Source of the DNA: Octopus sinensis
Lineage: Eukaryota
Reading direction: 5' to 3'
Assembly (NCBI RefSeq): GCF_006345805.1
Contig: NC_042998.1
Coordinates: forward strand, 152,520,001-152,584,000
Length of the DNA stretch: 64,000 nucleotides
Shown: positions 2,995-51,034 of the stretch, piece by piece
Layout: each line of letters starts with the position of its first letter
Numbering within the stretch: position 1 is the stretch's first letter
The notes under the pieces: model-generated
Database searches by the model: none
Told to the model about the DNA's origin: nothing
Seen by the model: the letters and a program-made list of their open reading frames with translations, nothing else
Translations under genes and position numbers: made by a program

Positions 2995-3520
2995 TTCCAT
3001 CAGTCCTCATCCACCTTTCAACGTAGACTTAGATCCAATATACACCTCCTTAAGAATACAAATAGAACCCTACTATTTTCAAATAAGACAAATAAATTTT
3101 ATAAGATAGATAATGACCACTACAACAGGATCTTAGAGAACAACATCACACAAAAATATAGATGGGCCACACATATACCTATAATAACATCAATAATGAG
3201 GCAAAACTAATAGCCACGACCGAGACATTGCCAACAGTAGAAATACTAGCTAAATGTAATGCTTTTATAGCTATCAAGGATCACAAACCAAACTTCGCCT
3301 CCAACCCCAAATGCCACCTGATCAACCCTGCTAAGTCAGAAATCAGACTGGTGAGTAAACACATCCTAAGAAGGGTTAATAAAGACATAACGAAGGCATC
3401 TAATCTCTCTTTATGGCATAACACAATCGAGGTGTTCCATTGTTTTGAGACCAAACGAAGCACTTTCAGAGCTAAGTTCATACAATTCGATATAGTGGAC
3501 TTTTATTCCATCGATATCGA
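2995..3520 (+). mobile_element. PLE reverse transcriptase N-terminal fragment, probably Naiad-type
   Basis: Two frames give FQRRLRSNIHLLKNTNRTLLFSNKTNKFYKI and NAFIAIKDHKPNFASNPKCHLINPAKSEIRLVSK...LW.NT.EV..F...KFIQFDIVDFYS. The KDHK.NF..P.C.LINP.K and FDI..FY motifs match a PLE RT subgroup as I recall it. The clade name is my inference. Confidence 0.7.
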
Positions 3521-3989
3521 AAATGTTCTCACTAGGTCGAGACTATTTCGATGCGCCTTCGTTTGATATAACTAGTACTTATTTTATTATATCAAGTTGA
3601 ACTACCGGCAAGCAGTCAGCATTGGCAGGATTTGAATTCGGAGATACAGAAGTAAATTTCTAGAAATAGTGACATGTTGAAAAGCTAATTACTTTCTAAA
3701 ATACATTTATAGCCAACGTGAAATATGCCTCCCTTAAACCCTGTTGTGTCTAAAACAATAAACAAATTATTTCGTGTTTGCTTTTATATTAAAGTCAAGA
3801 TGAAAGAAACAACTCGTTTACTACAACTAAAAAATAATTCCAGAGGGGAGAAAGATTAGAATTTACTGGGGAGGAAAAAATGATAACACAAATTAAATTT
3901 TACACGTCTGATTTCGTAAGTTTATAATAAAATATTCCTCAGCTACGAATCGTTGAAGAAAGTTCTCAGCTTTATACTCCAGCACAGAT

Positions 3990-4885: not shown

Positions 4886-5399
4886 GGATCATTTGTAAAA
4901 ATACATAAATTCGGAGAAGCACACTCTAAGATGTAAAGCAGTTAATATTATAGTGAGGTAGGCCGGTTTATGGGGTTAGCCTGGGGTTTTCGCTCATATC
5001 TTCAGACCCCAAACACTGCTGGCCTATATATATGTGTGTTCAGATTTCGAATCGCTTGCAAACTTTGCGACGTACCTCCAAACTATCCGTGGCCCATTGC
5101 TTGAAGGCACCTGCTAGGGCCTGAAGTTACTTCTACAGTGCTTTCAGTAAGTGATAATATATGTGTCTGTTATGTTATATATCTTTGTATGGCTATTAAG
5201 AATGTGATACATGTGAATGCAGTATATGTGTGTATACGTGTTTATTTGGGAATAGTATACGTTTATATATATATATATAAACGTATACTATTCCCAAATA
5301 AACATATATATATATATATATATACATATGTGTGTGTGTGTGTGTACACATTTCAGAGACTATTTTTAATCAAGTGTCCGTGCCATTATTAGTCAGGAT

Positions 5400-5600
5400 T
5401 AGGGAACCTGTATGTGTTGGCTTAAGCTGTTAGAAATAACAACCAAATCTCCCTCGAACGACAGTCCACTTTCTTTAAAATTAATAAAAGGCTGCATTAG
5501 ATAATGTGGTCTGAGAAACCTTTAAGAATAGGGGATGGTCCTGGAATGCTTTTCACCCAAGATCTGCTCAATTAGAATTAACCTGGAGCTAAACAGCAAC
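5400..5600 (+). repeat. Dispersed repeat, 3' part of an unclassified SINE/LINE; related copies at ~6430-6560 and ~53730-53900
   Basis: Shared blocks aaata(g/a)caacc..., ggat(g/a)gtc(c/a)tgg.tggaa and ...(g)gctaaacaac/cagc between the copies. Confidence 0.5.
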
Positions 5601-6599
5601 TTTATGTATACATCCAATACACACACACATACAATGTGTACATATGTGTGTTTTTGTTATTTTAGGCTGCCCCACCAGTTGGGTGTGTCTACCATACACC
5701 ACTATTCATCTTGATTTTTTTGTTGTTTCATCTCTGTCCTCCTGTATCCAGAGATCAGACAAAAAACCCCTTTCCATGTTTTTCTCTCACAAACCACTGT
5801 ACTTTTTCATCCAGTGTTCATTGTCCATTCTCATCATGTGTCCATACAAGAGCTTTCTTAATGTACATTAGCTGCTACTCTTAATACCAGACCACTTGTG
5901 TTCTAGCCTTCATGCAGATTACTGTTATGCTTTTAATGGACCATGCTCACTGCATATTCAATGCCCATAACTCTCAAACCTGCAACATTTTATGTATGCT
6001 TCATACGGTTTATCTTTTGCGCACGCACACACACACAAATGCTTTAAATTTCTCTCAGATCTTTCTAACTCTAAAAGAGCAACTGTATTTTAATTATACC
6101 CACATCTAACACTAAATTCCCAACTCAACAGATACTATCAATTCTGTCTAATAAACTAATTATTGTCATTGTTATTTCTGACTACAACAATACCTACCTT
6201 TTTTGTGTAATGAAGAAATTTAAAACAAATTTAATCTTTGCTGGTTGCTGGATTTGAACTTTGTATTTGAAACTAAATAGTTAGCTATGCACTGTTAAAA
6301 GCCTCCAGTTTATTGTTTTAGCTATCTCCTCTCTGAGTTTGTCACTGATGAATGTACTTCATACTGAGTATACATAAACAAAACTTACACTTCATTGCTC
6401 TACAGCTCAAATAAATGAGACACTGAGAAAGCCATTATGGAGTTGTTCTATCTGATACAAATAGCAACTAATAATGTATTTGCTGATACCATAAAAAGAC
6501 AGGATAGTCATGGTTGGAACATTTTTGATCAGAGGGTTGATGTGGGACTAAACAACCACTGCAACTCAAAGTATTAAATCTTGTGACTGTCATAATTGT

Positions 6600-7206
6600 T
6601 AGCTAAATGCATTCCTCATTTTATTCATTACTTAATTCCTAATTTCAATGTATATTCTGCCTAGTAACCATTACTGACACTGGTTGACTTTGGTCCATGC
6701 AATTAGGGCAGTGCTCTTTTCGTAAACTGCTAGATTTTTCAAAATATCTTAGATGGTATCCAACTTCTTATCATATAGATGGAGAAGGGTGTTCCAAGTT
6801 TGCCTTCCTGTTACCAACTGCATGGTTTGGATACAATTTATTCTAACACTCACTTTATATGGATTGTTTAAACATTGAAGTACCCTTGCTGAACTATTTT
6901 AGTTTTTAATTTAAAGTTTCTGCTGATCACCTACCTTAGACTAACGTTCCCTTCCCCAAGAGAACTTTTTTTGCACATCTACTTCTCAGTGAGGGTTGCC
7001 TGGCAAACTTGGAACACCCTTCTCCATCTATATGATAAGAAGTTGGATACCATCTAAGATATTTTGAAAAATCTAGCAGTTTACGAAAAGAGCACTGCCC
7101 TAATTGCATGGACCAAAGTCAACCAGTGTCAGTAATGGTTACTAGGCAGAATATACATTGAAATTAGGAATTAAGTAATGAATAAAATGAGGAATGCATT
7201 TAGCTA
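6600..7206. repeat. Perfect 205-bp inverted repeat with a 197-bp spacer
   Basis: 6600-6804 is the exact reverse complement of 7002-7206. I compared the arms block by block and found no mismatch. Confidence 0.97.
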
Positions 7207-7867
7207 CCAAGTAACTGGTTTATACTGTTGAACAAATAGTGCATAAGCGTAATTGATAATATAGGAGGGAAATTAGGTTTACACATGTGTAGCAGACATG
7301 TGTTTGCCACCACTTCTCAGGCAGGAGAGCTAAACTGCTTCTAGTTAATAATTGTAGATAGATAGCTTCTTATTGTTTTTATGAAATACATTGACAAGAA
7401 ATATTGGATGAATAAAGAATATGTAAAATACAGGGGAACAAGGCAACATCTGTAGTGTTGATGACACAATAAACTTCATTGTTTGTAAAATAACTGAGAA
7501 ACAAATGGTGTTGAGAGGAATGTTTAGTGTTGTTGAGAACATGACAATCTAACACTGGTGCTGTGATAAAGTACAACTGGTAAAGTGGTTGGTGTTAAGG
7601 AAGGGCATCCAGCCATAGAAACTATATCAAAAAGTGTACAAGTGTGACATCCCCAACTTGTCTGGGAGGACAATAATTTGAAATAAAGACTGATTCAAAT
7701 CATGACCACCTATCCATCTTCTGTACTGGCTTAGGTTGGGCAGTTTAACAGGAACATGCTGGTCCAAGATTTATATTGTGCTTTAAGGTCTGCTTTGGCT
7801 GGATGCCCTTCTTAATACAAACTACTTGACTTTTGTCATAGCACTAGTGTGTGTGTGTATATGTGAA

Positions 7868-8125: not shown

Positions 8126-8159
8126 CATTATCTTCAGGAGAGTCATTCAAAATACATAT

Positions 8160-8345
8160 AATCTATCATCATCATTTAATGCTCTCCATCCATGCTGGCA
8201 TGAGTTGGATGATTTGACAGCAGCTGACATGCCAGAGGACTGGACCAACTCTGTTGTCTGCTTTGGCATGGTTTCTATGGTTGGATTCCCTTCCTAGTGC
8301 CTTCTATATGGCACCAGCACCAACAAAGTTACCAAGTAACTTACA
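8160..8345 (-). mobile_element. RTE 3'-tail fragment
   Basis: (cat)n, then catgctggcatgagttggat...catggtttctatggttggattcccttcc, the reverse complement of the RTE terminus seen at 9830-9973. Confidence 0.75.
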
Positions 8346-8351
8346 AAACAA

Positions 8352-9973
8352 ATATCCTCAACAGTAAGGTGAGGGTTGGCAACGAGTACAGTGAAGAATT
8401 CCGGGTAGGGGTCCACCAAGGCTCAGTCCTCAGCCCCCTCCTATTTATCATAGTCCTCCAGGCAATAACGGAGGAATTCAAGACAGGATGCCCTTGGGAG
8501 CTCCTCTATGCTGATGACATTGCTCTAATAGCTGAGTCACTATCAGAACTGGAGGAGAAGTTTCAGGTGTGGAAGCAAGGATTAGAATCGAAGGGCCCTA
8601 GAGTCAATCTAGCTAAAACCAAAGTCCTAATAAGTAGGAAGGTAGACAAATCACAAACGCCTTCAGATAGATGGCCCTGCTCGATCTGGAGAAAAGGTGT
8701 AGGTAGAAACTCTATAAGATGCACCAAGTGTAAGCTATGGACACATAAGAGGTGCAGCAATGTCAAAGGAAGGCTAACTGGGAAGATAGTTTTTGTATGT
8801 GGCAGATGCTCAGGAACAATAAACACTGGAAATGCTCTGAGACCAACTTCTGTCATTTTCCAGGGAGAAAAACTAGAAATAGTTGATAGCTTCTGTTACC
8901 TAGGTGACCAAGTCAGTAGCGGGGGTGGGTGTGCTGAAAGTGTAACTGCTAGAGTAAGAATAGCTTGGGCAAAGTTCAGAGAGCTCTTACCTCTGCTGGT
9001 GACAAAAGGCCTCTCGCTCAGAGCAAAAGGCAGACTGTATGACGCGTGTGTACGAACAGCCATGCTACATGGCAGTGAAACATGGGCCATGACTGCTGAA
9101 GATATGCGTAAGCTCACAAGGAATGAAGCCAGTATGCTCCGATGGATGTGTAATGTCAGTGTCCATACTCGACAGAGTGTAAGTACCTTGAGAGAAAAGC
9201 TGGACCTAAGAAGCATCAGATGTGGTGTGCAAGAAAGACGTTTGCGCTGGTATGGTCATGTGGTAATGGATGAAGATAGTTGTGTGAAAAAGTGCCACAC
9301 TCTAGCGGTTGAGGGAACCTGTGGAAGAGGCAGACCCAGGAAAACCTGGGACGAGGTGGTGAAGCACGACCTTCGAACTTTAGGTCTCATTGAGGAAATG
9401 ACTAGAGACCGAGACCTCTGGAAGTATGCTGTGCGTGAGAAGACCCGGCAGGACAAGTGAGACCATAACCCGTGGCCTTCTACACGGGATGTAGCCAGTC
9501 CACTTATGCATACCTTCCCTTCTTGGGACACAAATCTCTACTTGTGAAGACCTGTTGAGGCAAGTGAGAATCAGAATCGAAATCGATCAATGGAAATTTC
9601 AGCTGAGATACCAGTGCCGGTGGCACGTGAGAGAACCATCCGTTCGTGGCCATTGCCAGCACCACCCTGACTGGCCTCGTGCCGGTGGCACATAAAAAGC
9701 ACCATCCGTTCGTGGCCGTTGCCCGCCCTGCCTGGCTCCCGTGCTGGTGGCACATAAAAAGCACCATCCGATCGTGGCCGTTTGAGAGACTCATCTGGCA
9801 CATAAAAAGCACCCACTACACTCATGGAGTGGTTGGCGTTAGGAAGGGCATCCAGCTGTAGAAACATTGCCAGATTCAGACTGGGCCTGGTGCAGCCTTC
9901 TGGCTTCCCAGACCCCAGTTGAACCGTCCAACCCATGCTAGCATGGAAAGCGGACGCTAAACGATGATGATGA
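8352..9973 (+). mobile_element. Young 5'-truncated RTE-clade LINE (Expander/Rex3-like): RT C-half, Cys-finger insert, arrayed 3' UTR and (GAT)n tail
   Basis: Open frame to 9460 with VGVHQGSVLSPLLF, LLYADDIAL, FCYLGD and RRLRWYGHV...GRGRPRKTW. Cys-rich insert at 8678-8809. 3' UTR repeats at 9614-9815. Tail acgatgatgatga. Confidence 0.95.
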
Positions 9974-13437: not shown

Positions 13438-13611
13438 ATCATCATTTAATGTCTGTTCTTTTTTTCATGCTAGCATGAGTTGGATGGTTTGACAGGAGCT
13501 GGGAAGCCAAAAAGCTGCACCAGGCTTTAATTGTCTGTTTTGACATGGTTTCTCTGGCTGGATGCCCTTCCTAACACCGACCACTCTACAGAGTGTACTG
13601 GGTACATCAGA
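13438..13611 (-). mobile_element. RTE 3' tail leading directly into the 26-bp satellite
   Basis: atcatcatttaatgtc...catgctagcatgagttggat...gctggatgcccttcctaacacc...gagtgtactgggt. Confidence 0.85.
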
Positions 13612-16582: not shown

Positions 16583-16607
16583 ATATATATTATATATTAT
16601 TTATATT

Positions 16608-16773
16608 AAGGGCATTACTATACATAAATGCCTCACGCTAGGAGGGACTCTTAAAGTCATAACTACTATAATAACCACATTGTACCGAACGCGAGGAACA
16701 ATGTGGTTATTGTAGTAGTTCTGACTTTAAGAGTCCCTCCTAGCATGAGGCATTTATGTATAGTAATGCCCTT
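16608..16773. mobile_element. Palindromic (foldback) MITE in a TA microsatellite
   Basis: Arms 16608-16683 and 16698-16773 (76 bp, 3 mismatches), 14-nt loop accgaacgcgagga, TA-rich flanks. Confidence 0.85.
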
Positions 16774-16975
16774 TATATAAATAAATATATTTATAGGGAA
16801 TAATTAATAAATTTTCCCTTATGAGGGTTTTCACGCTATCTACTTGATAAATTCTTATAAAGATTTTATCCTATATTCAAATTATATATATATATATATG
16901 TACATCTCTGTATATATACATATATACACACATATACATCTTGTGTGTGTGTATATATACGCACACACACACATG

Positions 16976-20723: not shown

Positions 20724-21960
20724 TATCAGGCACAACGTTTTGAACCATGAAGAATTTGTACCAGATTTTTGCAGAGTTTTGATAATTTTTTAAACATTTT
20801 TTTGCAATTGTCTGATGATATAGACATAAACTTACCCAAATGCATCAATAAATTAACGTTGATATTTTTTTCACTATTGTTACAATCATCTGAAATGGAA
20901 CTGTCAAAGTGTGATATTCAACTTCAAAAAAGGACATAAAGCAGCTGAAACTGCTTGCAATATCAACAAAATGTTTGATGAGGAAATGACCAGTGAGTAG
21001 TCAGTTCATAAATGGTTTAAACAATTTCGCAGTGGAGACCTGAGCCTTGAAGATATTGAGCATAGTGGACGCCCATCTGTCATCAATGATGGTCAATTAA
21101 AGACCTCATTGAGAAAAATCCATGTAAAACCACTCAAGAACTGGCAAACCATAAAATGCCTGCAACCATTTGCATGCGATCAAAAAGCTCAACAAATGGG
21201 TACCATGCGTTTTAATGAAAATCGGAAAATGTGCAGGTATGAAATTTGCACGTCACTTCTTCTCCATAACCAGACCAATTCATTTCTCAACCATATTGTA
21301 ACTTGTGATGAAAAGTGGATTCTGTATAATAATAATAATAATAAATGTTCTTCACAGTGGTTGGACCAAAATGAAGCACCGAAAACCTTCCCTATACCCA
21401 AGCTCTTCAAAAAGAAGGTTATGGTGACTGTTTAGTGGTGTACTGCTGGACTCATCCACTATCACTTCTTAAAACCCAGAAAAAACATTACTGCAGAAAC
21501 ATTGCTATGAAATTAACAAAATGAACAAAAAACTGCTACTCCTCCATCTCAGACTGGTCAACAGAAGAGGGCCAATCATTTTTCATGACAATGCTCAATC
21601 ACACATTTCCCTAATGATGCTCCAGACATTGAGGGAACTTAACTATGAAGTTCTTCCCCACCCAGCTTATTCTCCAGACCTTTCTCCTACCAACTACCAC
21701 TTTTTCAAGCACCTTGAGGGTTTCCTGCAAGAGAAGGAGTTCAAAAATCAAACCGATGCTGTAACTGTGTTCAAAGAGTTCATCAGCTCCAGAACTTCAG
21801 ATTTTTTATGTTACCGGAATAAACAAACTTGTAACTTGTTGGCAAAAATGTGTTGATTGTAATGGTACTTATTTTGATGAATAAAATTTCTGCATTGTTG
21901 AAATTTACTGTGATGAATTTCATGTTTCAAAACGTTGCTTATTTTTTATTCAGCCTGATA
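20724..21960 (+). mobile_element. Mariner transposon, Hsmar1/cecropia-like, defective
   Basis: GHKAAETACNIN...KWFKQFRSGDLSLED.EHSGRP, IVTCDEKWILYNN, IFHDNAQSH and LPHPAYSPDLSPTNYHFFKHL. Right TIR ...caaaacgttgcttattttttattcagcctgata. Left TIR tatcaggc..caacgttttgaaccatgaa carries a short deletion. TA flanks. Confidence 0.93.
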
Positions 21961-31581: not shown

Positions 31582-32026
31582 CAGCTGTTTCTACCATGAA
31601 GCAGCCAAATCTACATGTTATCCTCATCACGTCAGTGATATACAGGGATGAACAAACATTGGACAGGGATTGGACAATGGCTGAGCCCCAAGGCTTCTTC
31701 AGAGAGACCAAATGTTAGGAAACTAACGTGGGAAAGTAAGATAAAATGATAGATTAGGGTAAAATAAAATAGAAATAATGTAATTAGAAATAGTAAGGAA
31801 TGAAGTTCTTACCATTCTTTACTATTTCTATTACATTTTATTTTACCCTAATCTATTATTTTAACTTACTTTCCCACATGTTAGTTTCCTAACATTTGGA
31901 CTCTCTGAAGAAGCCTTGGGGCTCAACCATTGTCCAATCCCTGACCAATGTTTGTTCATCTCTCTTTATCATTGACGGGATGAGGATATCTTGGAAGATT
32001 TGGCTGCCTCATGATAGAAACAGCTG
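31582..32026. mobile_element. Large imperfect palindromic MITE (~220-bp arms); left end piggyBac-like, right end cut by RTE
   Basis: cagctgtttctaccatgaagcagccaaatct...gagccccaaggcttcttcagagag...gggtaaaataaaa is mirrored by ttttattttaccc...ctctctgaagaagccttggggctc...agatttggctgcctcatgatagaaacagctg. Centre ~31804. Left flank taaaccctta. Confidence 0.8.
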
Positions 32027-33298: not shown

Positions 33299-33867
33299 TA
33301 TATATCTGTATTTATTTCATTTGTTTACTTGAATCACTTATGCATATGTTTGTAATCAATTAATAAATAGATATAATTGAATGTTTACTGGCTGATGTTT
33401 GCCGATTCTTTATTCTCTCCCTTTTCTTATTTGCCTAATAAATCCTGGGTAACTTTCTAATTTACCCGCACCCATACCTAGTATTCAATTGCACTATTGC
33501 CATGTAATGGTAAGCACTTGCTTATGAGTACGTAGGTACATATCCACTAATATATTGGATATTTACTATCCCTTAGATGGTTTCTAGACCTGTATATGTA
33601 TGTATATATATGTGGGTATATGTATCTATACAAAGAAGTCAGCCAAATACATATATGTGTATATGTATAGTTATATATCTTTAAAAATGCGTACATGTAT
33701 ATATATATATATCTTTAAATATATGTATATATGTGGGTATATATATGTATATATATATGTATATTTATATATATGTATATATACATATATGTGTATATAT
33801 ATATATGTATACATATATGTATATATATATGTATACATACATAGTTTTATATATATATATATATATA

Positions 33868-34197
33868 TTGGGACACTCTTTTGTCTTAAAAAATAACTTC
33901 ACCTGCACATCAAAGAATTTACTCTATGCCATAAGGTGTGAAGGGTGCCACAAAGATTACATAGGGCAAATGAATCTTACCCTCAGAGAAAGGATGACAG
34001 TTCACTGCCAAAAATTGAAGGATCCCACCACAAGACAGATACCACTTAGTGGGCACTTAGATATCTGTGCACACAAGTCCCCCAAATTCCTAGTTTTCCC
34101 GCTATACCAATGCCCGGACAACACCACTGACCAAACACAAATAAATAGGGAAGATAATCTTATTCAAAAATACAGACCACAACTCAGCGTACTCTAA
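33868..34197 (+). mobile_element. PLE GIY-YIG endonuclease (C-terminal), Neptune-like
   Basis: [26 protein letters not shown]...LRERMTVH...PLSGHLDICAH...RE..LIQKYRPQL* has the Y-x-I-x-C..C..YIG, R..EH-like, H..C..H and RE motifs. Its 5' end is lost in a TA array. Confidence 0.9.
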
Positions 34198-35460
34198 CAT
34201 ACCCACCCAAAACAAATACACAGAAACACATACAGATATACAAAATCATACACAAAAACAATGCAAACCTCCACCGCAAACACACATATATATATATACA
34301 CACACGCACAAACACAATATCCCCACACACATTCCAAGACAAAACACATATATACACTTGCAATGCAATTCTAACAACTATAACCAACAGTCATACACAG
34401 ATACGTAAACACTACATGCACACCTACACACACCACCCTGACAATTACAAACCACATTCACACAAACACATACACACAAACACGCAAATACAACACAACC
34501 CTCACAGACAATACGCCCGTTCCCCAGTAAAAAATCACACACGCAAAAGAAAAAACACACATATACACACAATACAATCACAACAAATACTCACAAACAC
34601 ACATACCCACAAGCATGCACACACACAAACACACCGACACGTATACATGCACACTGCACTAACAATACAAACAAAACAAATCACAAATACAGCACACACA
34701 CATGTGCATATGCACACCCGGAAACTACATAAACCATACCCACATATATGCACACACACAAACGCATTCTCAGTACCTACATACACAAAACGCACATGCA
34801 CACATATATACACCACCCAGATAAACCTAACACACACAACCCCTGATAAATACAACACACATACACACCCACACATACATATGCACCCTCACACACATAC
34901 AGTTGTTCACATACACACACACACGCACACATCACAGACAAAACAACAGACACACACACTCATGTATACACACATAACATCCCCACCAGCACAAAACACA
35001 CATACATGCTCACAGAAACAGATGCACACACACACACACACACACACACACGAACAAACACATATACACACATGCGCACACACAACACTAACATACCAAT
35101 CATACACATACACACACACCAGCAGGACAATTATAACAACACAAACATACTCAGACAGACACACACACATGTACACACACACTCATGTACATACATAACA
35201 TGCACCCACACACACGAACACATACACATGCGCACACACAACACCCTAACAAATATTAATCACACACATACACACACACACACACACACAAACGTGCACA
35301 CATATACACACCATCCCACCAAATATAAAACACACACAGACCCATTTACACACGCCATGATAAACTCTGGGACCAATCAAAAATGGCTCGCGCACACAAA
35401 CACATGTATATACACACACACACACACACACATAGAAACATGCACAAAGACACACACACT
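34198..35460 (+). repeat. 1.26-kb degenerate (CA)n/(CACATA) low-complexity tract
   Basis: Directly visible. It starts at the GIY-YIG stop codon and ends at the conserved cacaccattctgacctctaagacc block. Confidence 0.95.
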
Positions 35461-35689
35461 CACACCATTCTGACCTCTAAGACCAGTTCTGACTAGCCCA
35501 GAAACAAAAAAATCCTTTTAATTCCACATTGCTCTTCCCCACCACCCCAACCAACCTCCCACATTGTCCCTTAAAATAGCAAACAATCCCTAGCTACACC
35601 AAGACAAAAAATGCCAGAAAGACCGGTTGGTTCCTCTCGAATTCTTTGTAAACTCTTAAATATATCTCCTGTGTGTGTGTATGTATATA

Positions 35690-35724
<35 letters not shown>

Positions 35725-35728
35725 TATA

Positions 35729-35899
35729 GGCGCAGGAGTGGCTGTGTGGTAAGTAGCTTGCTAACCAACCACTTGGTTCCGGGTTCAGTCCCACTGCGTG
35801 GCATCTTGGGCAAGTGTCTTCTGCTATAGCCCCGGGCCGACCAATGCCTTGTGAGTGGATTTGGTAGACGGAAACTGAAAGAAGCCTGTCGTATATATG

Positions 35900-35932
<33 letters not shown>

Positions 35933-36150
35933 TTGTGTGTCTGTGTTTGTCCCCCTAGCATTGCCTGACAACCGATGCTGGTGTGTTTACGTCCCCGTCA
36001 CTTAGCGGTTCGGCAAAAGAGACCGATAGAATAAGTACTGGGCTTACAAAGAATAAGTTCCGGGGTCGATTTGCTCAACTAAAGGCGGTGCTCCAGCATG
36101 GCCGCAGTCAAATGACTGAAACAAGTAAAAGAGTAAAAGAGTAAAAGAGT
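35729..36150 (+). mobile_element. Full-length young tRNA-derived SINE with CR1-type tail
   Basis: A box tggctgtgtgg, B box ggttcagtcc (35782-35791), core ccttgggcaagtgtcttc, internal (TA)(TG) tract, 3' ggcggtgctccagcatggccgcagtcaaatgactgaaacaagtaaaaga(gtaaaaga)2. Confidence 0.95.
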
Positions 36151-36451
36151 ACCAAACAAACATGATTTTTATTGAACTCTTAATACCTTTTGTTGAATAT
36201 TTTCTTAAATACTCTCTTGAAAAGTGTTTTTAAGATTTTCTTATTATTATCAAAGAATGTATATATGTATTTTAATACTTTTGTGACAATCAGTACTTAA
36301 CACAACAAAGCTTATACAAAGCTTTACATTTTACTTTTGACAATCTTTTTCTAAAGAAGTGAAACTGGTCAAATGAATAAACATCTTTAAAATTGCATTT
36401 TCAAACCTTCTTTCATATATATTTCCACTCATGCAGTACCCGTGCACTTTG

Positions 36452-36497
<46 letters not shown>

Positions 36498-37328
36498 CAA
36501 GATTCCAAGTAGATTTTATCTCAATAATAATGATGTGCACACATATTCTATCTATTTTCTGTCTATCTATCTCCCTCTCTTGTTCTTCTTCCTTTCTGTT
36601 TTTCTCTCCCACCCTGTCCCTATTCTTCTCTCCCCATTCACCGTTCTCTCTCTCTCTCTTTCTCAATTTTCTTCCTTGGCTCTCTTACTGCTTACACGTA
36701 ACTAACAGCTTCGTTCCTAAAGATAAGACATGCTTTTATCTGTCTCTTCTCAAACCTCATTTTTCCAGTGTTCGGCACTTCACATCATCTTGGCTTAACA
36801 TCCCTCACTGTTTGTTTTTACTATTTTGTTCTCACTGTCCTATTTTTGGGACCACTTTCACCCGCCACAAAAAATCCCAAATTTTATTTAATTTGCTTTG
36901 AGGGAAGGGCTGTTTTAATGAAGTCATGTTTTGTCCCTACCTTCGAAACACAAAGTAGATAAAACAGGGGACAATTGATGAAAGAAATGTTCTTTATGTT
37001 GCATGTCTCGTTTCTCTGTTTTTGCGTTGTTCGAAAAAAGTTTGTTTTGTACGTTCTTGTTTCTCATTCTGTCTCGTTTATTTGATGTCCTGTACCCATA
37101 TATGCACGTATATATACATATATATGTAGGTATGTACATATATATATGTATATATGCATATAGTTATATTATTATATGATCGAATGCCACACATCCTTTT
37201 CCAAGTAAGTTTTATCTTAATAAGTGCGATGCGCACACTTATTCTATCTCTTTTCTGTCTATCTCCCTCTCTTGTTCTTCCTTTCTGTTTTTTGATGTTC
37301 TGTACACATGTGTGCATGTATATATATA

Positions 37329-37370
<42 letters not shown>

Positions 37371-37429
37371 GGTATGTACATATATGTATGTATATATGCA
37401 TATATTTATATACTTATATATAGATGTAT

Positions 37430-37989: not shown

Positions 37990-39316
37990 ATGATTGATTG
38001 ATTGATTGATTCTAGTTTCAGCTTATGAGCTGTGGCCATGCTGGGGCACGGCCATTTGGTGTTGCTACTTGGTTTCACTTCACAAAAGCTTTCTAGCAAC
38101 TGCCATTTGGTGCATGAGAGAGTTCGATGCAGCTGCCCTCATCTGCCCCTCCTGCCGTGAAGTTGGTTCATCTGGGACACCTGACAGGAAGGGATCCAGC
38201 TTCATTTTAAAGACATCTGCATCCACCCCATGCAGGTCTCTCAGGTTCTTCGGGAGGATATTGAAGAGCTGTGGGCCTCGGAAGCCCAGGCTATCACAGA
38301 ATCTTGTCCTACATCTTGATGGCAAGTTTGGAGTCCTAGGCACCACGCAGTGGCGCCCAGTTCTGGCATTTGCGTAACTTTCGATGCCAAAGTTCAGGAC
38401 ACGTCCCTCCAGGATCTTCCAGATGTATATTATGGCATATCTTTCCCGCCTACGCTCCAGGGAATATAATTTTAATCTCTTGAGTCTTTCCCAGTAGCTT
38501 ACATTCTGCATAGAGGCTATCTTCTTTGTGTAGCTACGTTGGATCGCCTCGAGCTCTGTGATCAACTTGACACTGGATGGTGACCATAACTGAGAGCAGT
38601 AGTCAAAGTGGCTTAGGACAAGTGTCCTCCAGAGGTCCATCATGGTTTCTTGTTCTCTTGTTCTAAAGGTTCTGAGGATCCATCCGGCCAGTCGTCTACA
38701 TTTCATTGCCAATTTAGCAACATGTACACGAAAGGTCGCGTCATCACTCATGTAAATACCTAGGTCACGCACCGATTGTGCCTCTGGGATTGCTATTCCT
38801 CCGGGTCCAGTGTATTCATTGGGTATTGCATTTAGTTTTGCATGCTGATAGTATAGAGCTTGAAACTTTTCAGCATTGAACTGCATGCTATTCTTTTCAG
38901 CCCACTTGTATATTTTGTCTAGCTCACATTGCAGGTGTTTAGTGTCCTCAGGGTTCTGTATTGCCTGTGAAACTTTTGTATCATCTGCATAACTTGTGAT
39001 CGTGGCTCTCTGCGTGGCTGAGGGCATGTCTGAGAGGGCCATTATGAACAGTAGTGGTCCCAGAACAGTGCCCTGCGGAACACCTCTCACTATTTGCGTG
39101 TTAATGGAAGTGGTCCCATTGGCCACTACCACCTGACTTCTATCTTTCAGAAAGTCATGAAGCCATTCTCCCAGTTTTCCAACTATGTTGAGATCACGCA
39201 GTTTGTGACATATCATTCCATGATCGACTTTATCAAAGGCCTTTGCAAAGTCGAGATATATCACTTCCACATTTGAGTGGTTGAACAGCCGTTTCAGCAC
39301 CCAGTTTCAGCACCCA
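37990..39316 (-). mobile_element. Young 5'-truncated CR1-group LINE, one uninterrupted 406-aa frame
   Basis: ORF 38080..39300 contains [37 protein letters not shown] and SLERRR. 3' tail gctgaaactagaatc(aatc)n. Confidence 0.97.
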
Positions 39317-39384
39317 ACCTTAATGTTGCGTTTGGTCTCCTTCAGAGCTTTCCTAAATCTACGGGCTGTAAAACTAGAAATGTA

Positions 39385-39546
39385 TGTGTGTGTATATATG
39401 TGTGTATGTATATGTGTATGTATATATGTGTGTGTATGTATATGTGTATGTATATATGTGTATGTATATGTGTATGTATATATGTGTGGTATATATATAT
39501 GTATATATATATATGTATATATGTATGTATGTATATATATATATTG

Positions 39547-39577
<31 letters not shown>

Positions 39578-39581
39578 GTAT

Positions 39582-39628
<47 letters not shown>

Positions 39629-39629
39629 G

Positions 39630-39661
<32 letters not shown>

Positions 39662-39867
39662 ATATATATATGTATATATATATATGTATATATTATATGT
39701 ATATATATATTATATATATGTATATATATATATGTATATATATATATGTATATATATATGTTGTATATATATATGTATTATATATATATGTATATGTATA
39801 TATAATATGTATATATATATGTATATGTATATATATATAGTAATATATATATGTATACATATATATG

Positions 39868-39900
<33 letters not shown>

Positions 39901-40210
39901 GTATATAATATATGTATATATATATCTGTATATATATATATGTATATATATATATGTATCTATATATATGTATATAATATATGTATATATATATATATGT
40001 ATATATATATATTGTATATATATATATTATATATGTATATATATATGTGTATATATATGTGTATATATATGTGTATATATATATGTGTATAATATATGTG
40101 TATATAATATGTGTATATATATATTGTGTATATATATATTATGTATATATATATTATATGTGTATGTATAAATATATATGTGTATATATATATGTGTATA
40201 TATATATATA
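39385..40210. repeat. TA-rich microsatellite array
   Basis: (TA)n interrupted by TG, about 0.8 kb. Confidence 0.97.
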
Positions 40211-42790
40211 GAAAGTCAAATGGCCAGATGGCCATCTCCTCCCTGGAATGACATCACTTGAACAGAGACAGACAGAGTCCTTGTTGGCTCTCACACGCAA
40301 GTTTTTCATGGAGCAAGCAGTGCTTTGGCCAACAAGAGGTGAGAATGTTTTGGACCTCTGTTTCACAAGCAACCCGATGCTCATCCTCAACATAATGGTA
40401 ACACCAACAATTCTCTCAGATCACAACTTAGTAGAGGTAATGATATATGGTATGAGAGAGTTAGTTGAGACGCAGCCATTAGAAAATACCACAGGCCTAT
40501 CCAGTCTAAACTTCCATAAGGCAAACTGGAAGAAGATCAACGAAGAGATCCGAAAACATGACTGGAGTGACTTCATCACCACACAAGACACCAACACACA
40601 TTTCCAACATTTCATGACAACAATACAGAACATATGCCATAAGTTTGTCCGGAGAAAAAAGCCAGCGGGCATAGGAACGTTATTCCCAGAGACAGGAAAA
40701 TACTTATGAGGCGAAGAGCTAAGCTCTCGAAGCCACTGAATGCACGGCAGAGAAACAATGAGGGACTCCACCTGAAACTTTTTGAAACGGAAACTGCACT
40801 CAAACTTTCCTATGAGAAGGAGAGGGCAGAGAGAGAAGCCAGGGCCATAGAGAATATTAAAACAAACCCTAAAGCCTTCTTTAAATTTGCGAAAGAAACC
40901 ACCTCGGTACACTGCAAGATTGGCCCACTCTTTGATAAAAAGGGCTCTCTAACTGAGGACCCCCAAGGGATAAGTGAAATACTAAAGGAACAGTATAAAA
41001 GTGTGTTCACATCCCCTCTGGGGCACATGCAAATCACAAACCCAGAAGTTTTCTTTGATGCCACAACACTCCAAAACCAAACAACAACCATCGACCACAT
41101 AGACATAACAGAGAGGGATGTAATATCTGCCATAGAAGAAATGAGATAAACTCAGCTGCTGGACCAGATGGATTCCCAGCAGTCCTCCTAAAAACATGCA
41201 GGCATGCCCTAGCGGGACCACTGAAGAAGCTCTTCAGTGGTTCCTTGGCTAACGGTAAACTGCCCAGGGCGCTAAAAGAAGGCACCATATGCCCTATCCA
41301 CAAAGGAGGGAGTAGAGCAGAGGCCAAAAACTACAGGCCAGTCTCCCTGATGTCACACATAAGTAAGGTCATGGAACGAATCATCAGAAAAAAAACTGAT
41401 CACGTTCCTCGAAGAAACTAACCGTCTCACTGACACACAGCATGGCTTTCGCCCAGGAAGAAGCTGCCTTACGCAGCTGTTACAACACTACGACTGGGTA
41501 CTGAAACAACTACTGGATCGCTCACAGGTAGATGTGGTATATCTCGACTTGCGAAGGCCTTTGACAAAGTCGACCACGGAGTGATATGTCACAAATTACT
41601 CAGACTCGGCAAAACAGGAAAAGTAGGTGAGTGGATACATGACTTCCTGAAGGACAGAAGCCAGATGGTTGCAGCCAATGGAGCCCTCTCGGGAAAGACA
41701 CCAATAGCAAGCGGGGTGCCACAGGGCACAGTCTTGGGACCCTTGCTGTTTTTGGTGGCGCTCTCTGACATGCCCTTGGTAGCACAAACAACATCCCTCA
41801 CTAGCTATGCTGATGACACAAAGGTAGCACAGGCAATCAAAACCCAGCTGATGCTGACCTTTTACAACAAGATCTGGATGCCATATACAAATGGGCTGAA
41901 GACAACAACATGCAATTTAATGCTGGTAAATTTCAAGCCTTACAATATCAAGCTGTAAACACATATACATTACAACACAACTATACTGGTCCAGGAGGGA
42001 TCGAAATCCCAGTATCGAAATCAATACGGGACCTGGGGATAGACATGAGTGACGATGCATCTTTTTCTTCACACATCGCGAAGGTGGCGACAATGTGCAG
42101 ACGACTCACTGGCTGGATCCTGAGGACATTCCGGACAAGAGACTGCGAGACCATGTTGACACTATGGAGGACATTTGTCCTAAGCCGCCTGGACTACTGC
42201 TCCCAACTGTGGTCACCGCATAGTGTCAAACTAACCACAGAGCTTGAGACAATCCAAAGACATTTCACCAAGAGGATTTCCACCATGAAAGAAAAGAACT
42301 ATTGGGAGAGGCTTAGGGAACTCAATTTGTACTCCTTGGAACGAAGACGAGAGAGATATGCAGTGATATACATATGGAAAATCCTGGAGGGACTAGCACC
42401 AAATTTTGGAATTGAGAGCTGTTCCAATCCCCGTACAGGACGTCACTGTGTGGTGCCAAAGGTCCCGTCTACCACATCCAGGGTAAGGAGCAGATACTGT
42501 AATAGCCTGGGGTTCAGGGGCCCTCAGCTGTTCAACAAACTGCCAAGAAAACTAAGAGATCTACATGATGCGGATGTGGACATTTTCAAAAAACATCTAG
42601 ACAAGCTGCTTTCCAGGATCCCAGATGAACCCACTGCAAGGTACGAAGGTAACCTAAGGGCAGCAGCTACAAACTCTCTCTTAGATCAGTGGCCAGCCAC
42701 GGCAAACTGGACTTAGAGAGGGTAGCAACAAGGGCGGTGCCCCAGCATGGCCTCAGCCGGATGGCTGAAACAAGTAAAAGAGTAAAAGAG
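40211..42790 (+). mobile_element. CR1-group LINE (second subfamily), APE C-terminus through RT, several frameshifts
   Basis: PTRGENVLDLCFT...SDHNLV, AAGPDGFP...KNYRPVSL, GVPQGTVLGPLLF...SYADDTK and [10 protein letters not shown]. Tail gctgaaacaagtaaaagagtaaaagag. Confidence 0.95.
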
Positions 42791-43607
42791 TATATATGTG
42801 TATATATATATGTATATATATATATGTATATATATGTATATATATGTGTATATATATATATATGTTTATATGTATATATATATATGTGTATATATATATA
42901 TGTATGTATATATGTGTATATATATATGTATATATATATATGTATATATATATGTGTGTATATATATATGTATAAAAATATGTATATATGTGTGTGTATA
43001 TATATATGTATATATGTGTGTATATATATATGTATATATATGTATATATATGTGTGTATATATATATATGTATATATATGTATATATATATGTGTATATA
43101 TATATGTATATATATATATGTGTATATATATGTGTATATATATATGTATATATATGTATATAATATATGTATATATATATATGTGTATATATATGTATAT
43201 ATATATGTATATATATATGTATATATATATGTATATATATATGTATATATATATTGTATATATATATATATATATTATATATGTGTATATATATGTATAT
43301 ATATATGTGTATATATATGTATATATATATGTGTATATATATATGTGTATATATATGTGTATATATATATGTATATATATGTGTATATATATGTATATAT
43401 GTGTATATATATATGTATATATATGTGTATATATATATGTATATATATGTGTATATATATATGTATATATATGTGTATATATATATGTATATATATATAT
43501 GTATATATGTATATATATTATGTATATATATGTATTATATATATGTATATATATATGTATATATATATGTATATATGTATATATATATGTATATATATGT
43601 ATATATG

Positions 43608-43638
<31 letters not shown>

Positions 43639-44048
43639 GTATATATTATATATGTATAATATATATATGTATCTATATATATATGTATATATTATATATG
43701 TATATATATATATATGTGTATATATATATGTATTATATATATGTGTATATATATGTATATATATTGTGTATATATATATTATATGTATATATTATGTATA
43801 TATATATGTGTATATATATATACGTATATATATATGTGTATATATATATGTATATATATATATGTATATATATGTATATATATATGTGTATATATATATG
43901 TATATATATATGTGTATATATATGTATATATATATGTGTATATATATGTATATATATATGTATATATATATGTATTTATACATATGTATATATATGTATA
44001 TATATATATATGTATATATATATGTATTTATACATATGTATATATATG

Positions 44049-44079
<31 letters not shown>

Positions 44080-44560
44080 GTGTATATATATATGTATATA
44101 TATATATGTATATATACATATGTGTATATATATACATGTATGTATATATATATGTATGTATATATATATATGTATGTATATATATATATGTATGTATATA
44201 TATATATATGTATGTATATATATATATATGTATGTATATATATATATGTATATATTATATATGTATGTATACATATATATATGTATGTATACATATATAT
44301 ATGTATATCTATATGTATACATATATATATGTATGTATAATATATGTATGTATACATATATATATGTATGTATAATATATATATGTATATATATATATAT
44401 GTATGTATACATATATATGTATATATATATATATGTATACATATATATATGTATTATATATATGTATACATATATATATGTATATATATATATGTATGTA
44501 TACATATATATATGTATATATATATATGTATACATATATATATGTATATATATATGTATG

Positions 44561-44599
<39 letters not shown>

Positions 44600-44602
44600 G
44601 TA
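42791..44602. repeat. TA-rich microsatellite array
   Basis: About 1.8 kb of (TA)nTG and TACA units. Confidence 0.97.
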
Positions 44603-45460
44603 TGCGCTACTGGCACACAAAGGTAAATGACGTGAAGACTGGATACACTGGCCCAGGAAGAATTGCAATCCCTGAGTCAAAATCAGTGCGTGACCTGGGC
44701 ATTGACATGAGCAATGATGCATCTTTCCAAATGCATATTGCTAATCTGGTGATAAAATGCAGACGGCTAGCTGGATGGATTCTCCGAACTTTCAGAACAA
44801 GAGAGAAGGAGACACTGATGGTCCTATGGAAAACATTTGTCCTCAGCCGCTTGGACTACTGCTCCCAACTTTGGTCACCACACAATATAAAACAAACAGC
44901 AGAACTCGAAGCAACTCAGAGAAGCTACACAAAGAAAATCGTCTCAATGCAAAATGTCAGCTACTGGGAAAGACTGAAGGTATTAACCTCTTCTCCCTGG
45001 AGCGGAGGCGGGAGAGATATGCAGTAATATACATCTGGAAAATCCTGGAGGGTCTTATCCCAAACTTTGGCATTCAAAGTTACTCCAACCGCAGAACGGG
45101 GCGCCGCTGCGTGGTGCCAAGGATTCCAACATCACCATCAAAATACAGGTCCAGATACTGCAACAGCTTGGGTTTCAGAGGACCACAGCTTTTCAACATC
45201 CTCCCTAAATGCCTGAGAGACTTACATGGTGTGGATGTGGGTTTCTTTAAAACTAAACTGGATCTCTTCTTGTTGGAAGTCCCAGATGAACCTACCTCAC
45301 GACAGGAGACGCGGATGCGGGCAGCAGCATCGAACTCCCTTGTTGATCAAGTGCCACGTATCAGAGGTGGATTCACAAACTAGTGTGGCTCATTCAGCGG
45401 TGGTGCCCCAGCATGGCCGCGGCCTTCGGGCTAAAACATTTTTAAGGATTTAAGGATTTA
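44603..45460 (+). mobile_element. CR1-group LINE 3' fragment (third tail type)
   Basis: [19 protein letters not shown]...[20 protein letters not shown]...GFRGPQLFN. Tail ctaaaacatttttaaggatttaaggattt. Confidence 0.95.
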
Positions 45461-45915
45461 TATGTATGTATACATATATATATGTATATATATATATATG
45501 TATACATATATATATGTATATATATATATATGTATGTATACATATATATATGTATATATATATATGTATGTATATATATATGTATGTATATATATATATG
45601 TATGTATATATATATGTATGTATATATATATGTATGTATATATATATATGTATGTATTCATATATATATGTATATATATATATATGTATGTATACATATA
45701 TATATGTATGTATATATATATATGTATATATATATATATGTATGTATGTATATATATATGTATGTATACATATATATATGTATACATATATATATGTATA
45801 TATATATATGTATGTATACATATATATATATGTATGTATACATATATATATATGTATGTATACATATATATATGTATGTATACATATATATATATATGTA
45901 TATATATATATGTAA

Positions 45916-45950
<35 letters not shown>

Positions 45951-47245: not shown

Positions 47246-47286
<41 letters not shown>

Positions 47287-47289
47287 TGT
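45461..47289. repeat. TA-rich microsatellite array with higher-order sub-periods
   Basis: About 1.8 kb, with blocks of tatgtatgtatacatatata, tgtatttatacata and a ~28-nt tatatatatgtgtatatatatatgtatg unit near 47000-47190. Confidence 0.97.
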
Positions 47290-50200: not shown

Positions 50201-50405
50201 TGGACCTCTTCCTGTCAGGTGTCCCGGATGAACCAACTTCACGGCAGGAGGTGCAGATGAGGGCAGCTGCATCGAACTCTCTCATGCATCAGATGGCGTT
50301 TGCTAAAAAGCATCCGTGAGGTAAAATCGTGTAGCAAACCAAATGGCGGTGCCCCAGCATGGCCACAGCTCATTAGCTGAAACTGGAAAAATCAAAATCA
50401 AAATC
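47290..50405 (+). mobile_element. Near full-length ORF2 CR1-group LINE (APE plus RT), with small deletions and frameshifts
   Basis: LLNIRGL...TETHL...RTDR...GGVAMYI...YRP...MGDFNLP, PTRAGNTLDL...SDHN, ATGPDGFP...KNYRPISL...QHGFRPGRSC...[23 protein letters not shown]...YADD. Tail gctgaaactggaaaaatc(aaaatc)2. Confidence 0.97.
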
Positions 50406-51030: not shown

Positions 51031-51034
51031 GTAT

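What the first reader, a model, noticed from the sequence alone, without database searches (positions are those of the whole stretch)
6600..7206. Mismatch-free 205-bp inverted repeat in otherwise decayed, non-TE-looking sequence
Seen: arms 6600-6804 and 7002-7206 are 100% complementary, with a 197-nt spacer. Both outer ends are the palindrome TAGCTA, and a mini-palindrome TTGCC-T-GGCAA sits at the inner junction of the right arm. Every other palindrome in the window has mismatches. Inference, three options: a very recent template-switch inverted duplication; a young long-TIR MITE with a TA target; or arms homogenised by conversion or selection. If intronic, it gives a 205-bp perfect dsRNA, an ideal ADAR or Dicer substrate. 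Established: coleoid cephalopods edit RNA extensively. An assembly or polishing artefact is also possible.
Basis: partly seen in the sequence, partly recalled or inferred. Interest (0 to 1): 0.7.

Follow-up and report, generated by a model that had tools for sequence, protein, structure and literature searches.

The report
Perfect 205-bp hairpin repeat, octopus DNA
A 607-bp stretch of non-coding octopus-type DNA carries two exactly reverse-complementary 205-bp arms around a 197-bp spacer; it is real in the sequence and less than about 2 million years old, most likely a recently inserted small DNA transposon or a one-step inverted duplication, and such hairpin loci are common in octopus genomes, so it is fairly ordinary.

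Summary
Arms 6600-6804 and 7002-7206 are exact reverse complements (205 nt, no mismatch) around a 197-nt spacer, and identity falls to random at all four boundaries. It is the only 100% repeat pair in the window; other repeat copies are 65-88% alike.

The window is octopod. RT and TE copies best match Octopus vulgaris and O. bimaculoides.

Arm, spacer and the flanks (5352-7575) have no second copy in 84 kb sampled. They show no coding remnant, no Rfam or tRNA hit and no adapter. Zero differences in 205 sites puts the age under about 2 My.

The origin is not settled:
- Young TA-flanked long-TIR non-autonomous DNA transposon (about 0.45).
- One-step template-switch or fold-back inverted duplication (about 0.28).
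- Older repeat re-homogenised by conversion (about 0.1).
- Assembly artefact (about 0.07); its shape does not fit known fold-back read artefacts.

I could not measure genome-wide copy number or find an empty site.

If transcribed, the locus would form a 205-bp perfect dsRNA, a plausible ADAR hyper-editing substrate. A Dicer/endo-siRNA role is unlikely, because molluscs show no endo-siRNA pathway.

Three older hairpin repeats lie in the same window, and published work reports near-perfect inverted repeats as unusually frequent in octopus. Interest is low to moderate.

The parts
6600..6804 (.). Left arm of the inverted repeat (205 nt, 35% GC, 1 CpG)
   Evidence: Exact reverse complement of 7002-7206. 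No other copy in the window or in L001.
6805..7001 (.). Spacer (197 nt, 36% GC), unique and without internal symmetry
   Evidence: Spacer against its own reverse complement gives z = 0.28. It shows no similarity to the arm, no Rfam or tRNA hit and no second copy.
7002..7206 (.). Right arm of the inverted repeat (205 nt)
   Evidence: Exact reverse complement of 6600-6804.
6600..6613 (.). Outer terminus of the left arm: back-to-back palindromes TAGCTA + AATGCATT. The first two bases, TA, could be one copy of a TA target duplication.
   Evidence: These are the only palindromic 6-mers and 8-mer in the arm. The chance of this pair at a fixed position is about 5e-5.
7193..7206 (.). Outer terminus of the right arm: AATGCATT + TAGCTA. 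The last two bases, TA, could be the other copy of a TA target duplication.
6800..6805 (+). TTGCCT, first copy of a 6-nt direct repeat that brackets the spacer (last 5 nt of the left arm plus the first spacer base)
   Evidence: Read from the sequence. Unexplained; about 1% by chance on my own estimate.
6996..7006 (+). TTGCC-T-GGCAA mini-palindrome at the inner junction of the right arm. 6996-7001 is the second TTGCCT copy.
   Evidence: Read from the sequence.

Best explanation
The element 6600-7206 is a very young insertion (under about 2 My) of a small, non-coding, non-autonomous cut-and-paste DNA transposon with unusually long terminal inverted repeats of about 203-205 bp around a 197-bp core. 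It most likely went into a TA dinucleotide, which is the Tc1/mariner target. A transposase supplied in trans by an autonomous relative elsewhere in the genome would bind the arm termini, cut the element out and paste it at TA, duplicating the TA. The arms are identical because the copy is new. It probably has no function for the host. If it lies inside a transcribed region, the RNA would fold into a 205-bp perfect duplex and be hyper-edited by ADAR. Shown here: the exact structure, its sharp edges, its youth, its non-coding nature, the TA at both ends, and its octopod origin. Inferred: that it is mobile, which superfamily it belongs to, and any transcription or editing.
For: The structure is TIR-core-TIR, 607 bp and non-coding: no Pfam domain in six frames and no protein anywhere matches any frame. 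Identity drops from 100% to random at all four boundaries, as expected for one discrete inserted unit. The outermost bases are TA...TA. All target duplications of 3-11 bp placed outside the repeat are absent. That excludes hAT-, Mutator-, P/Galileo-, Foldback- and piggyBac-type insertions and leaves TA. Zero of 205 differences gives an age under 2.0 My at dS 0.0036/site/My. O. vulgaris has 3,243 recently active TIR insertions (2% or less divergence), of which 1,553 are Tc1-Mariner averaging about 700 bp (PMC13282606), so young small TA-targeting elements of this size do occur in the genus. A decayed mariner copy in the window shows the superfamily is present. Three other hairpin-type repeats of graded age (about 8 and 14 My for two of them) lie in the same 64 kb, so self-complementary elements are a regular part of this genome.
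Against: I found no second copy of arm or spacer in 84 kb of octopod sequence. This test is weak: a 1,000-copy family would give about 0.03 expected copies. The TA ends have roughly a 10% chance of arising by accident, and they cannot be separated from the palindrome TAGCTA. The terminus TA|GCTAAATG is unlike the Tc1/mariner ends I know (CAGT.., CAGG.., TTAGG..; from my own knowledge) and unlike the mariner copy in the window. Long-TIR Tc1-like elements usually carry duplicated binding sites in each arm (IR/DR), and none is present. Every other TE copy in the window is old, 65-88% identical. The terminal double palindrome and the TTGCCT bracket are not predicted by this model.
Confidence: 0.45

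Rival explanations
1. One-step local inverted duplication. During replication or break repair, a 3' end switched template or folded back at a short inverted microhomology (TTGCC at 6800-6804 pairing with GGCAA at 7002-7006). It copied 205 nt of the neighbouring sequence in reverse complement and then rejoined the original path. One arm and the spacer are native sequence and the other arm is the new copy.
For: Perfect arm identity and sharp edges come automatically from a single copying event. Arm, spacer and flanks are all unique in the sample and look like the surrounding unique DNA, at 35-36% GC. No target duplication of 3 bp or more is present. Short palindromes sit at both boundaries: TAGCTA and AATGCATT on the outside, TTGCC-T-GGCAA on the inside. 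Template switching is documented to create perfect reverse-complement repeats and to expand or homogenise short inverted repeats (PMC8794818, PMC5453318, PMC8604942, PMC13100816, PMC10766183).
Against: Documented template-switch hairpins are mostly tens of bases long (the largest rRNA case in PMC8794818 was 59 bp); a 205-nt tract is long for this process. Beyond the arms there is no usable microhomology at either junction (my own junction analysis). The TA...TA ends would be a roughly 10% coincidence. Four hairpin repeats in 64 kb would need an implausibly high rate of such events, whereas palindromic transposons are the usual source of abundant hairpins in animal genomes (for example the frog Harbinger repeat, PMC5625713).
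Confidence: 0.28
2. An older inverted repeat, of either origin, whose arms were recently made identical again by arm-to-arm gene conversion or by template switching between the arms.
For: Template switching between inverted-repeat arms is reported to homogenise them (PMC8604942, PMC13100816). The window's other hairpins show that such structures persist for many millions of years.
Against: No mismatch at all over the full 205 nt and no residual similarity beyond the arms or inside the spacer. A conversion tract would have to cover each arm exactly from end to end. The two older hairpins nearby have drifted to 86-94%, so homogenisation is not general here.
Confidence: 0.1
3. Assembly or polishing artefact: the animal's DNA has one arm only, or a different arrangement.
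For: Perfect identity is what an artefact would give, and no reads were available to check. The window comes from a long-read-type assembly, with several kb of AT-rich simple-repeat arrays resolved and no N, and long reads are known to carry fold-back chimeras (PMC12870357, PMC6218980).
Against: Known fold-back artefacts join a read to its own complement with no unique spacer, and their arms are as long as the read (PMC12870357). Here the arms are 205 nt, the spacer is 197 nt of unique sequence, and unique flanks continue on both sides. No SMRTbell, ONT, TruSeq or Nextera adapter shares more than 8 nt with the element; the adapter sequences came from my memory. Older imperfect hairpins of the same architecture in the window cannot be artefacts of this kind.
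Confidence: 0.07
4. A selected hairpin-RNA gene, either a source of endogenous siRNA or a dedicated ADAR substrate, whose stem is kept perfect by selection.
For: It would form a 205-bp perfect duplex with a very strong predicted fold. Octopus shows the strongest hyper-editing signal among the animals surveyed, and that signal is tied to near-perfect dsRNA (PMC5625713).
Against: No Rfam family matches. The arms match no protein-coding sequence in any frame, unlike Drosophila hpRNAs, whose arms derive from target genes according to my own knowledge. Molluscs, octopus included, show no endo-siRNA pathway (PMC12479628). ADAR hyper-editing needs no selection on the substrate, and edited repeats are typically young neutral insertions (PMC9989829). 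I found no evidence of transcription or conservation.
Confidence: 0.03

Closest known systems
Non-autonomous Tc1/mariner elements and MITEs (Stowaway-like), including the young roughly 700-bp Tc1-Mariner insertions annotated in Octopus vulgaris (PMC13282606)
   Same: Small (607 bp), non-coding, with terminal inverted repeats, TA at both ends, and very young.
   Different: The TIRs are about 205 bp, two thirds of the element, where MITEs usually have 10-40 bp. The terminus GCTAAATG is unlike known Tc1/mariner ends and unlike the mariner copy in the window. No IR/DR binding-site repeats are present. No family copies have been seen.
Palindromic or fold-back transposons (Drosophila FB and Galileo, the palindromic Harbinger repeat of Xenopus cited in PMC5625713)
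   Same: Most of the element is self-complementary and would fold into a long hairpin that ADAR could edit without a partner copy.
   Different: The required target duplications are absent: 7 bp for Galileo/P, 9 bp for FB, TWA for Harbinger. The 197-nt non-palindromic core is larger than in typical palindromic MITEs.
Template-switch mutations and inverted-repeat expansion (PMC5453318, PMC8794818, PMC13100816); ODIRA-type switches at short inverted repeats (PMC10766183)
   Same: A perfect reverse-complement copy of adjacent sequence made in one step, with short palindromes at the boundaries.
   Different: The copied tract of 205 nt is several times longer than typical short-range events and far shorter than ODIRA amplicons. 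The ancestral state is unknown.
Inverted Alu-type repeat pairs that form ADAR substrates
   Same: Near-perfect reverse-oriented sequence within 2 kb, which meets the criterion used for dsRNA potential in PMC5625713.
   Different: This is not two independent insertions of a dispersed repeat. Neither arm has its own target duplication, and the arms have no other copy in the sample.

Membership tests
MITE / non-autonomous Tc1-mariner element | Terminal inverted repeats at both ends | tested here: met
   205-nt exact inverted repeat. This is far longer than is typical for MITEs.
MITE / non-autonomous Tc1-mariner element | TA target-site duplication flanking the TIRs | tested here: inconclusive
   TA is present at 6600-6601 and 7205-7206, but TA is palindromic and cannot be told apart from the repeat itself. 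The chance expectation is about 10%.
MITE / non-autonomous Tc1-mariner element | Multiple dispersed copies in the genome | not testable with these tools
   No copy in the 64-kb window plus the 21-kb O. vulgaris locus. Nothing in the protein collections or in viral, prokaryotic or metagenome contigs. No cephalopod genome could be searched by DNA.
MITE / non-autonomous Tc1-mariner element | Termini related to an autonomous partner | tested here: not met
   The only mariner copy available (about 20725-21960, Pfam Transposase_1) has the TIR TCAGGCACAACGTTTTGAA, which is unrelated to GCTAAATGCATTCC. Other partners could not be examined.
MITE / non-autonomous Tc1-mariner element | Small (under about 800 bp) and non-coding | tested here: met
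   607 bp. The longest ORF is 57 aa, with no Pfam hit in six frames.
IR/DR group of Tc1-like elements (long TIRs of about 200 bp) | Two direct-repeat transposase-binding sites within each long TIR | tested here: not met
   No repeated k-mer of 8 nt or more, and no 16-mer pair with 3 or fewer mismatches, within the arm.
Long-TIR superfamilies with longer target duplications (Mutator/MULE 9-10 bp, Foldback 9 bp, P/Galileo 7-8 bp, hAT 8 bp, piggyBac TTAA, Harbinger TWA) | Direct target duplication of the characteristic length just outside the TIRs | tested here: not met
   The flanks CATAATTGT and CCAAGTAAC share nothing. The only direct repeats are those created by the terminal palindromes themselves: TAGCTA at 6 bp and TTAGCTA at 7 bp.
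Template-switch / fold-back inverted duplication | Reverse-complement copy of immediately neighbouring sequence with exact identity and sharp ends | tested here: met
Template-switch / fold-back inverted duplication | Ancestral or allelic state with a single arm plus spacer | not testable with these tools
   No orthologous or allelic locus could be fetched. Exact look-ups of 23 window ORFs all failed.
Hairpin-RNA (endo-siRNA) locus | Arms derived from, and complementary to, a target gene | tested here: not met
   A six-frame translation of the whole element found no protein at E <= 1 among 5.8 billion. The exhaustive search of the 57-aa ORF gave only two weak hits in repetitive proteins.
Hairpin-RNA (endo-siRNA) locus | A dedicated siRNA pathway in the lineage and small RNAs from the arms | not tested
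   Literature only: no endo-siRNA pathway detected in molluscs, O. bimaculoides included (PMC12479628).
ADAR hyper-editing substrate | Reverse-oriented match of at least 40 bp and over 95% identity within 2 kb (criterion of PMC5625713) | tested here: met
   the predicted fold is.
ADAR hyper-editing substrate | Transcription of both arms on one RNA, and A-to-G clusters | not testable with these tools
   No RNA data. No gene model or exon was recognised near the locus.
Long-read fold-back / missed-adapter artefact | Forward and reverse copies joined directly or through an adapter, with arms running the length of the read | tested here: not met
   A 197-nt unique spacer, 205-nt arms and unique flanks on both sides. 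No adapter k-mer longer than 8 nt (PMC12870357).

The most novel reading that the evidence does not exclude
The repeat is a freshly made (under 2 My) product of replication template switching, and it is the youngest of a series. The same 64 kb holds four unrelated hairpin repeats of graded age (100%, 94%, 90%, 86-91% arm identity), none with a dispersed copy in the sample and none with a clear target duplication. That would mean octopus genomes keep producing long dsRNA-forming hairpins de novo rather than by transposition. This would help explain their exceptional density of near-perfect inverted repeats and their heavy ADAR hyper-editing load.
Probability: 0.1. Interest if true: 0.55.

Novelty: new member of a known kind. 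Interest (0 to 1): 0.22.

Why it matters
On its own it matters little. It is one more young hairpin-forming locus in a genome already known to be rich in them. It could serve as a dated (under 2 My), structurally perfect test substrate: if transcribed, it would show how octopus ADAR handles a mismatch-free 205-bp duplex. Its presence or absence among individuals and sister species would show whether such hairpins arise by transposition or by template switching. That bears on why octopus has so much dsRNA-forming DNA.

Tried and rejected
- **Other copies through protein space.**
  - Exact look-ups of the two ORFs that cross the arm/spacer junctions found nothing.
  - Homology searches with the 57-aa ORF and with a six-frame translation of the whole element found nothing.
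  - The exhaustive HMMER search gave two weak multi-stretch hits in long proteins, which I treat as spurious.
- **DNA pattern scans.** Arm 20-22-mers found nothing in viral, prokaryotic and metagenome contigs. These collections hold no cephalopod genome, so this says little.
- **Fetching the same or the orthologous locus.** 23 window ORFs in all were looked up by exact sequence and none is on record. The one Octopus locus I could fetch (L001, O. vulgaris OX597814.1) is a paralogous RT copy and carries no copy of the element.
- **RNA families.** No Rfam match at gathering or permissive thresholds, and no tRNA or SINE head.
- **Older, larger palindrome partly homogenised.** Rejected: there is no residual symmetry in the flanks or the spacer.
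- **Two independent insertions of one 205-bp repeat.** Rejected: neither arm has its own target duplication, and two hits of a very young family within 200 bp are improbable.
- **IR/DR Tc1-like structure.** Rejected.
- **Derivation from the mariner copy in the window.** Rejected.
- **Spacer as a nested TE inserted into a perfect palindrome, with TTGCCT as its target duplication.** The arithmetic fits, but the spacer has no tail, no TIR and no other copy. I left it as unexplained.
- **Junction microhomology for a template switch.** None is visible beyond the arms. Any microhomology that was used would be hidden inside the arms.
- **The supplement of the O. vulgaris repeat paper** holds no consensus library to search.

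Full report
**Observation.** Positions 6600-6804 and 7002-7206 are exact reverse complements of each other (205 nt, no mismatch or gap), separated by 197 nt.
- The repeat finder's longer 212-nt, 99% version adds only 5 of 7 matching bases on the outside, which is chance. On the inside the match fails at the first base.
- The outer ends are TAGCTA, and the mini-palindrome TTGCC-T-GGCAA lies at 6996-7006.
- Folded as RNA, the element gives -408 kcal/mol against -135 +/- 7 for shuffles.
- A dust-filtered self-comparison of the window shows that all other repeat pairs, direct or inverted, are 65-88% identical, so this is the only 100% pair.

**Where the window comes from.** The window is eukaryotic and rich in TEs.
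- It carries reverse-transcriptase fragments and a decayed mariner transposase, several kb of AT-rich simple-repeat arrays, and no tRNA or Rfam family.
- The RT ORF next to the repeat (8297-9460) has its best named matches in Octopus vulgaris (84%) and O. bimaculoides (81%). All other animals fall at 57% or below.
- The one O. vulgaris locus I could fetch (L001) shares the window's TE families at 84-93% DNA identity, and also a roughly 50-bp SINE-like core.
The species stays unknown: exact look-ups of 23 window ORFs found none in the public protein collection.

**The element and its surroundings.**
- Arm, spacer and the whole stretch 5352-7575 have no similarity to anything else in the window or in L001.
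- No Pfam domain appears in any of the six frames of 5300-7700.
- A six-frame translation of the element matches none of 5.8 billion predicted proteins, so the arms are not a recognisable gene fragment.
- There is no residual complementarity between the outer flanks, no internal symmetry in the spacer, and no arm-spacer similarity. The repeat is a discrete unit with four sharp edges, not the core of a larger decayed palindrome.
- The arm has no internal direct repeats.
- No sequencing adapter is present.

**Age.** I used the octopus synonymous rate of 0.0036 per site per My that the O. vulgaris repeat study applies (PMC13282606). Two 205-nt arms should then gain about 1.5 differences per My. 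Seeing none puts the last event that made them identical under 2.0 My at 95%. The TE copies around it date to tens of My (PMC13282606).

**Target duplications.** I enumerated every possible pair of boundaries near the ends.
- Outside the repeat the flanks (CATAATTGT / CCAAGTAAC) share nothing. Insertions that duplicate 3-11 bp (hAT, Mutator, Foldback, P/Galileo, Harbinger, piggyBac) are therefore excluded for a copy this young.
- What remains is TA, the Tc1/mariner target. Here it cannot be told apart from the repeat, and it has about a 10% chance of being accidental.
- The only other candidates are direct repeats that exist only because the terminus is palindromic (TAGCTA, TTAGCTA).

**Two boundary oddities remain unexplained.**
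- The outermost 14 nt of each arm are two back-to-back palindromes, TAGCTA and AATGCATT. They are the only palindromic 6- or 8-mers in the arm, and the chance of this at a fixed position is about 5e-5.
- TTGCCT occurs at 6800-6805 and again at 6996-7001, bracketing the spacer. Removing one copy and the 190 nt between them would leave a perfect 205+T+205 palindrome.
- Neither main model predicts these features, and I could not build a template-switch path that uses them.

**Context that lowers the surprise.**
- The same 64 kb contains three more hairpin-type repeats. They are a 188-nt palindrome at 16597-16784 (arms 94%, 8-nt loop), a 445-nt palindrome at 31582-32026 (arms 86-91%, about 10-nt loop), and a 98-nt AT-rich one at 5223-5320.
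- The first two were searched against the 84-kb sample and have no second copy there. Their arm divergence corresponds to roughly 8 and 14 My.
- In this window, 1.3% of 40-mers have a reverse-complement partner of at least 95% identity within 2 kb. About half of that comes from these hairpins and the rest from (TA)n-type microsatellites.
- Porath et al. measured 0.44% for O. bimaculoides by a similar criterion and called it exceptionally high among 19 animals (PMC5625713).
- A curated O. vulgaris annotation lists 3,243 recently active TIR insertions, 1,553 of them Tc1-Mariner averaging about 700 bp (PMC13282606).
- A young, small, TA-flanked element is therefore an expected kind of object in this genus. 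Its absence from an 84-kb sample is uninformative, since a 1,000-copy family would yield about 0.03 expected copies.

**Weighing the explanations.**
- *Young long-TIR transposon, about 0.45.* In favour: the unit-like structure, its size, the TA ends, the exclusion of other superfamilies, the documented recent TIR activity in Octopus, and the local abundance of hairpin elements. Against: atypical termini, no IR/DR sites, no relation to the mariner copy in the window, and no second copy seen.
- *One-step inverted duplication by template switching or fold-back priming, about 0.28.* In favour: it gives perfect arms, sharp edges, uniqueness and no target duplication directly, and it has solid precedent (PMC8794818, PMC5453318, PMC8604942, PMC13100816, PMC10766183). 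Against: 205 nt is long for the short-range process, the TA ends would be a coincidence, and four hairpins in 64 kb would need a very high event rate.
- *Re-homogenisation of an older repeat, about 0.1.* It needs a conversion tract that matches both arms end to end.
- *Assembly artefact, about 0.07.* It cannot be excluded without reads, but known fold-back artefacts have no unique spacer and read-length arms (PMC12870357).
- *Selected hairpin-RNA gene, about 0.03.* I found no support for it.

**What it would do.** Nothing shows that the locus is transcribed. No exon or gene model was recognised nearby.
- If it lies in a pre-mRNA, the 205-bp perfect stem meets the published criteria for ADAR hyper-editing substrates. 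In metazoans, octopus included, these are mainly young repeats (PMC5625713, PMC9989829).
A 2025 survey found no endo-siRNA pathway in molluscs, O. bimaculoides included (PMC12479628).
- At the DNA level, and from my own knowledge of yeast and human inverted-Alu work rather than any test here, a 197-bp spacer greatly reduces the hairpin-driven instability that closely spaced perfect repeats cause. That may be why the structure is tolerated.

**Verdict.** The object is a new member of a known kind, a young hairpin-forming inverted repeat in an octopod genome. Whether it arose by transposition or by template switching is still open, and a whole-genome BLAST plus the empty-site test would settle it. 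Interest is low to moderate.

Noticed in passing
window 16597-16784: A 188-nt palindrome with 90-nt arms, 94% complementary, and an 8-nt loop. Its GC-richer core GGGCATTAC...GTAATGCCC is flanked by TTAA on the left and TTTA on the right, inside AT-rich microsatellite. It may be a TTAA-targeting palindromic MITE. There is no second copy in 84 kb. Arm divergence corresponds to about 8 My.
   Followed up: partly
window 31582-32026: A 445-nt near-complete palindrome with arms of about 215 nt, 86-91% complementary, and a loop of about 10 nt. Its termini are CAGCTGTTTCTACC / GGTAGAAACAGCTG, with no obvious target duplication and no second copy in 84 kb. Arm divergence corresponds to about 14 My. It has the architecture the 6600-7206 repeat would have without its spacer.
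   Followed up: partly
window 5223-5320: A 98-nt AT-rich palindrome, 90% self-complementary, embedded in (TA)n/(TG)n microsatellite.
   Followed up: no
window about 20725-21960: A decayed mariner copy: Pfam Transposase_1 in ORF 21109-21435, with the reading frame broken into at least two ORFs. The TIRs are about TCAGGCACAACGTTTTGAA and it lies within TA-rich flanks. It is unrelated to the arms of the finding.
   Followed up: partly
window 7576-7632, 7793-7830, 8150-8301 and more than 10 other sites (e.g. 9828-9865, 13538-13589, 57748-57793, 62168-62218): A roughly 50-bp core (AGGAAGGGCATCCAGCCATAGAAAC...) recurs at least 12 times in the window in both orientations, and also in the O. vulgaris locus L001. 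It often sits at the 3' side of RT-bearing copies, so it looks like a shared SINE/LINE tail module.
   Followed up: no
window 42700-47300 (also 33600-35500, 36300-37400, 39300-40250, 50300-51100): Several kb of AT-rich (TATG/TATA/TGTA)n-like arrays (GC 0.26), fully resolved with no N, interleaved with RT fragments. They produce hundreds of meaningless long 'YIYI' ORFs and thousands of spurious inverted-repeat calls. They also imply a long-read assembly.
   Followed up: no
window 3162-3566 and 33733-34197: These ORFs have motifs that I recall from Penelope-like elements (KDHKPNF...NPKC.LINPAKSE; a GIY-YIG-like CEGCHKDYIGQ). Pfam gave no hit at E <= 0.001, so the assignment rests on memory only.
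   Followed up: partly
window 34001-36000: Strong strand asymmetry (GC skew -0.49, AT skew +0.37) caused by (CA/CACA-T)n-rich simple sequence.
   Followed up: no
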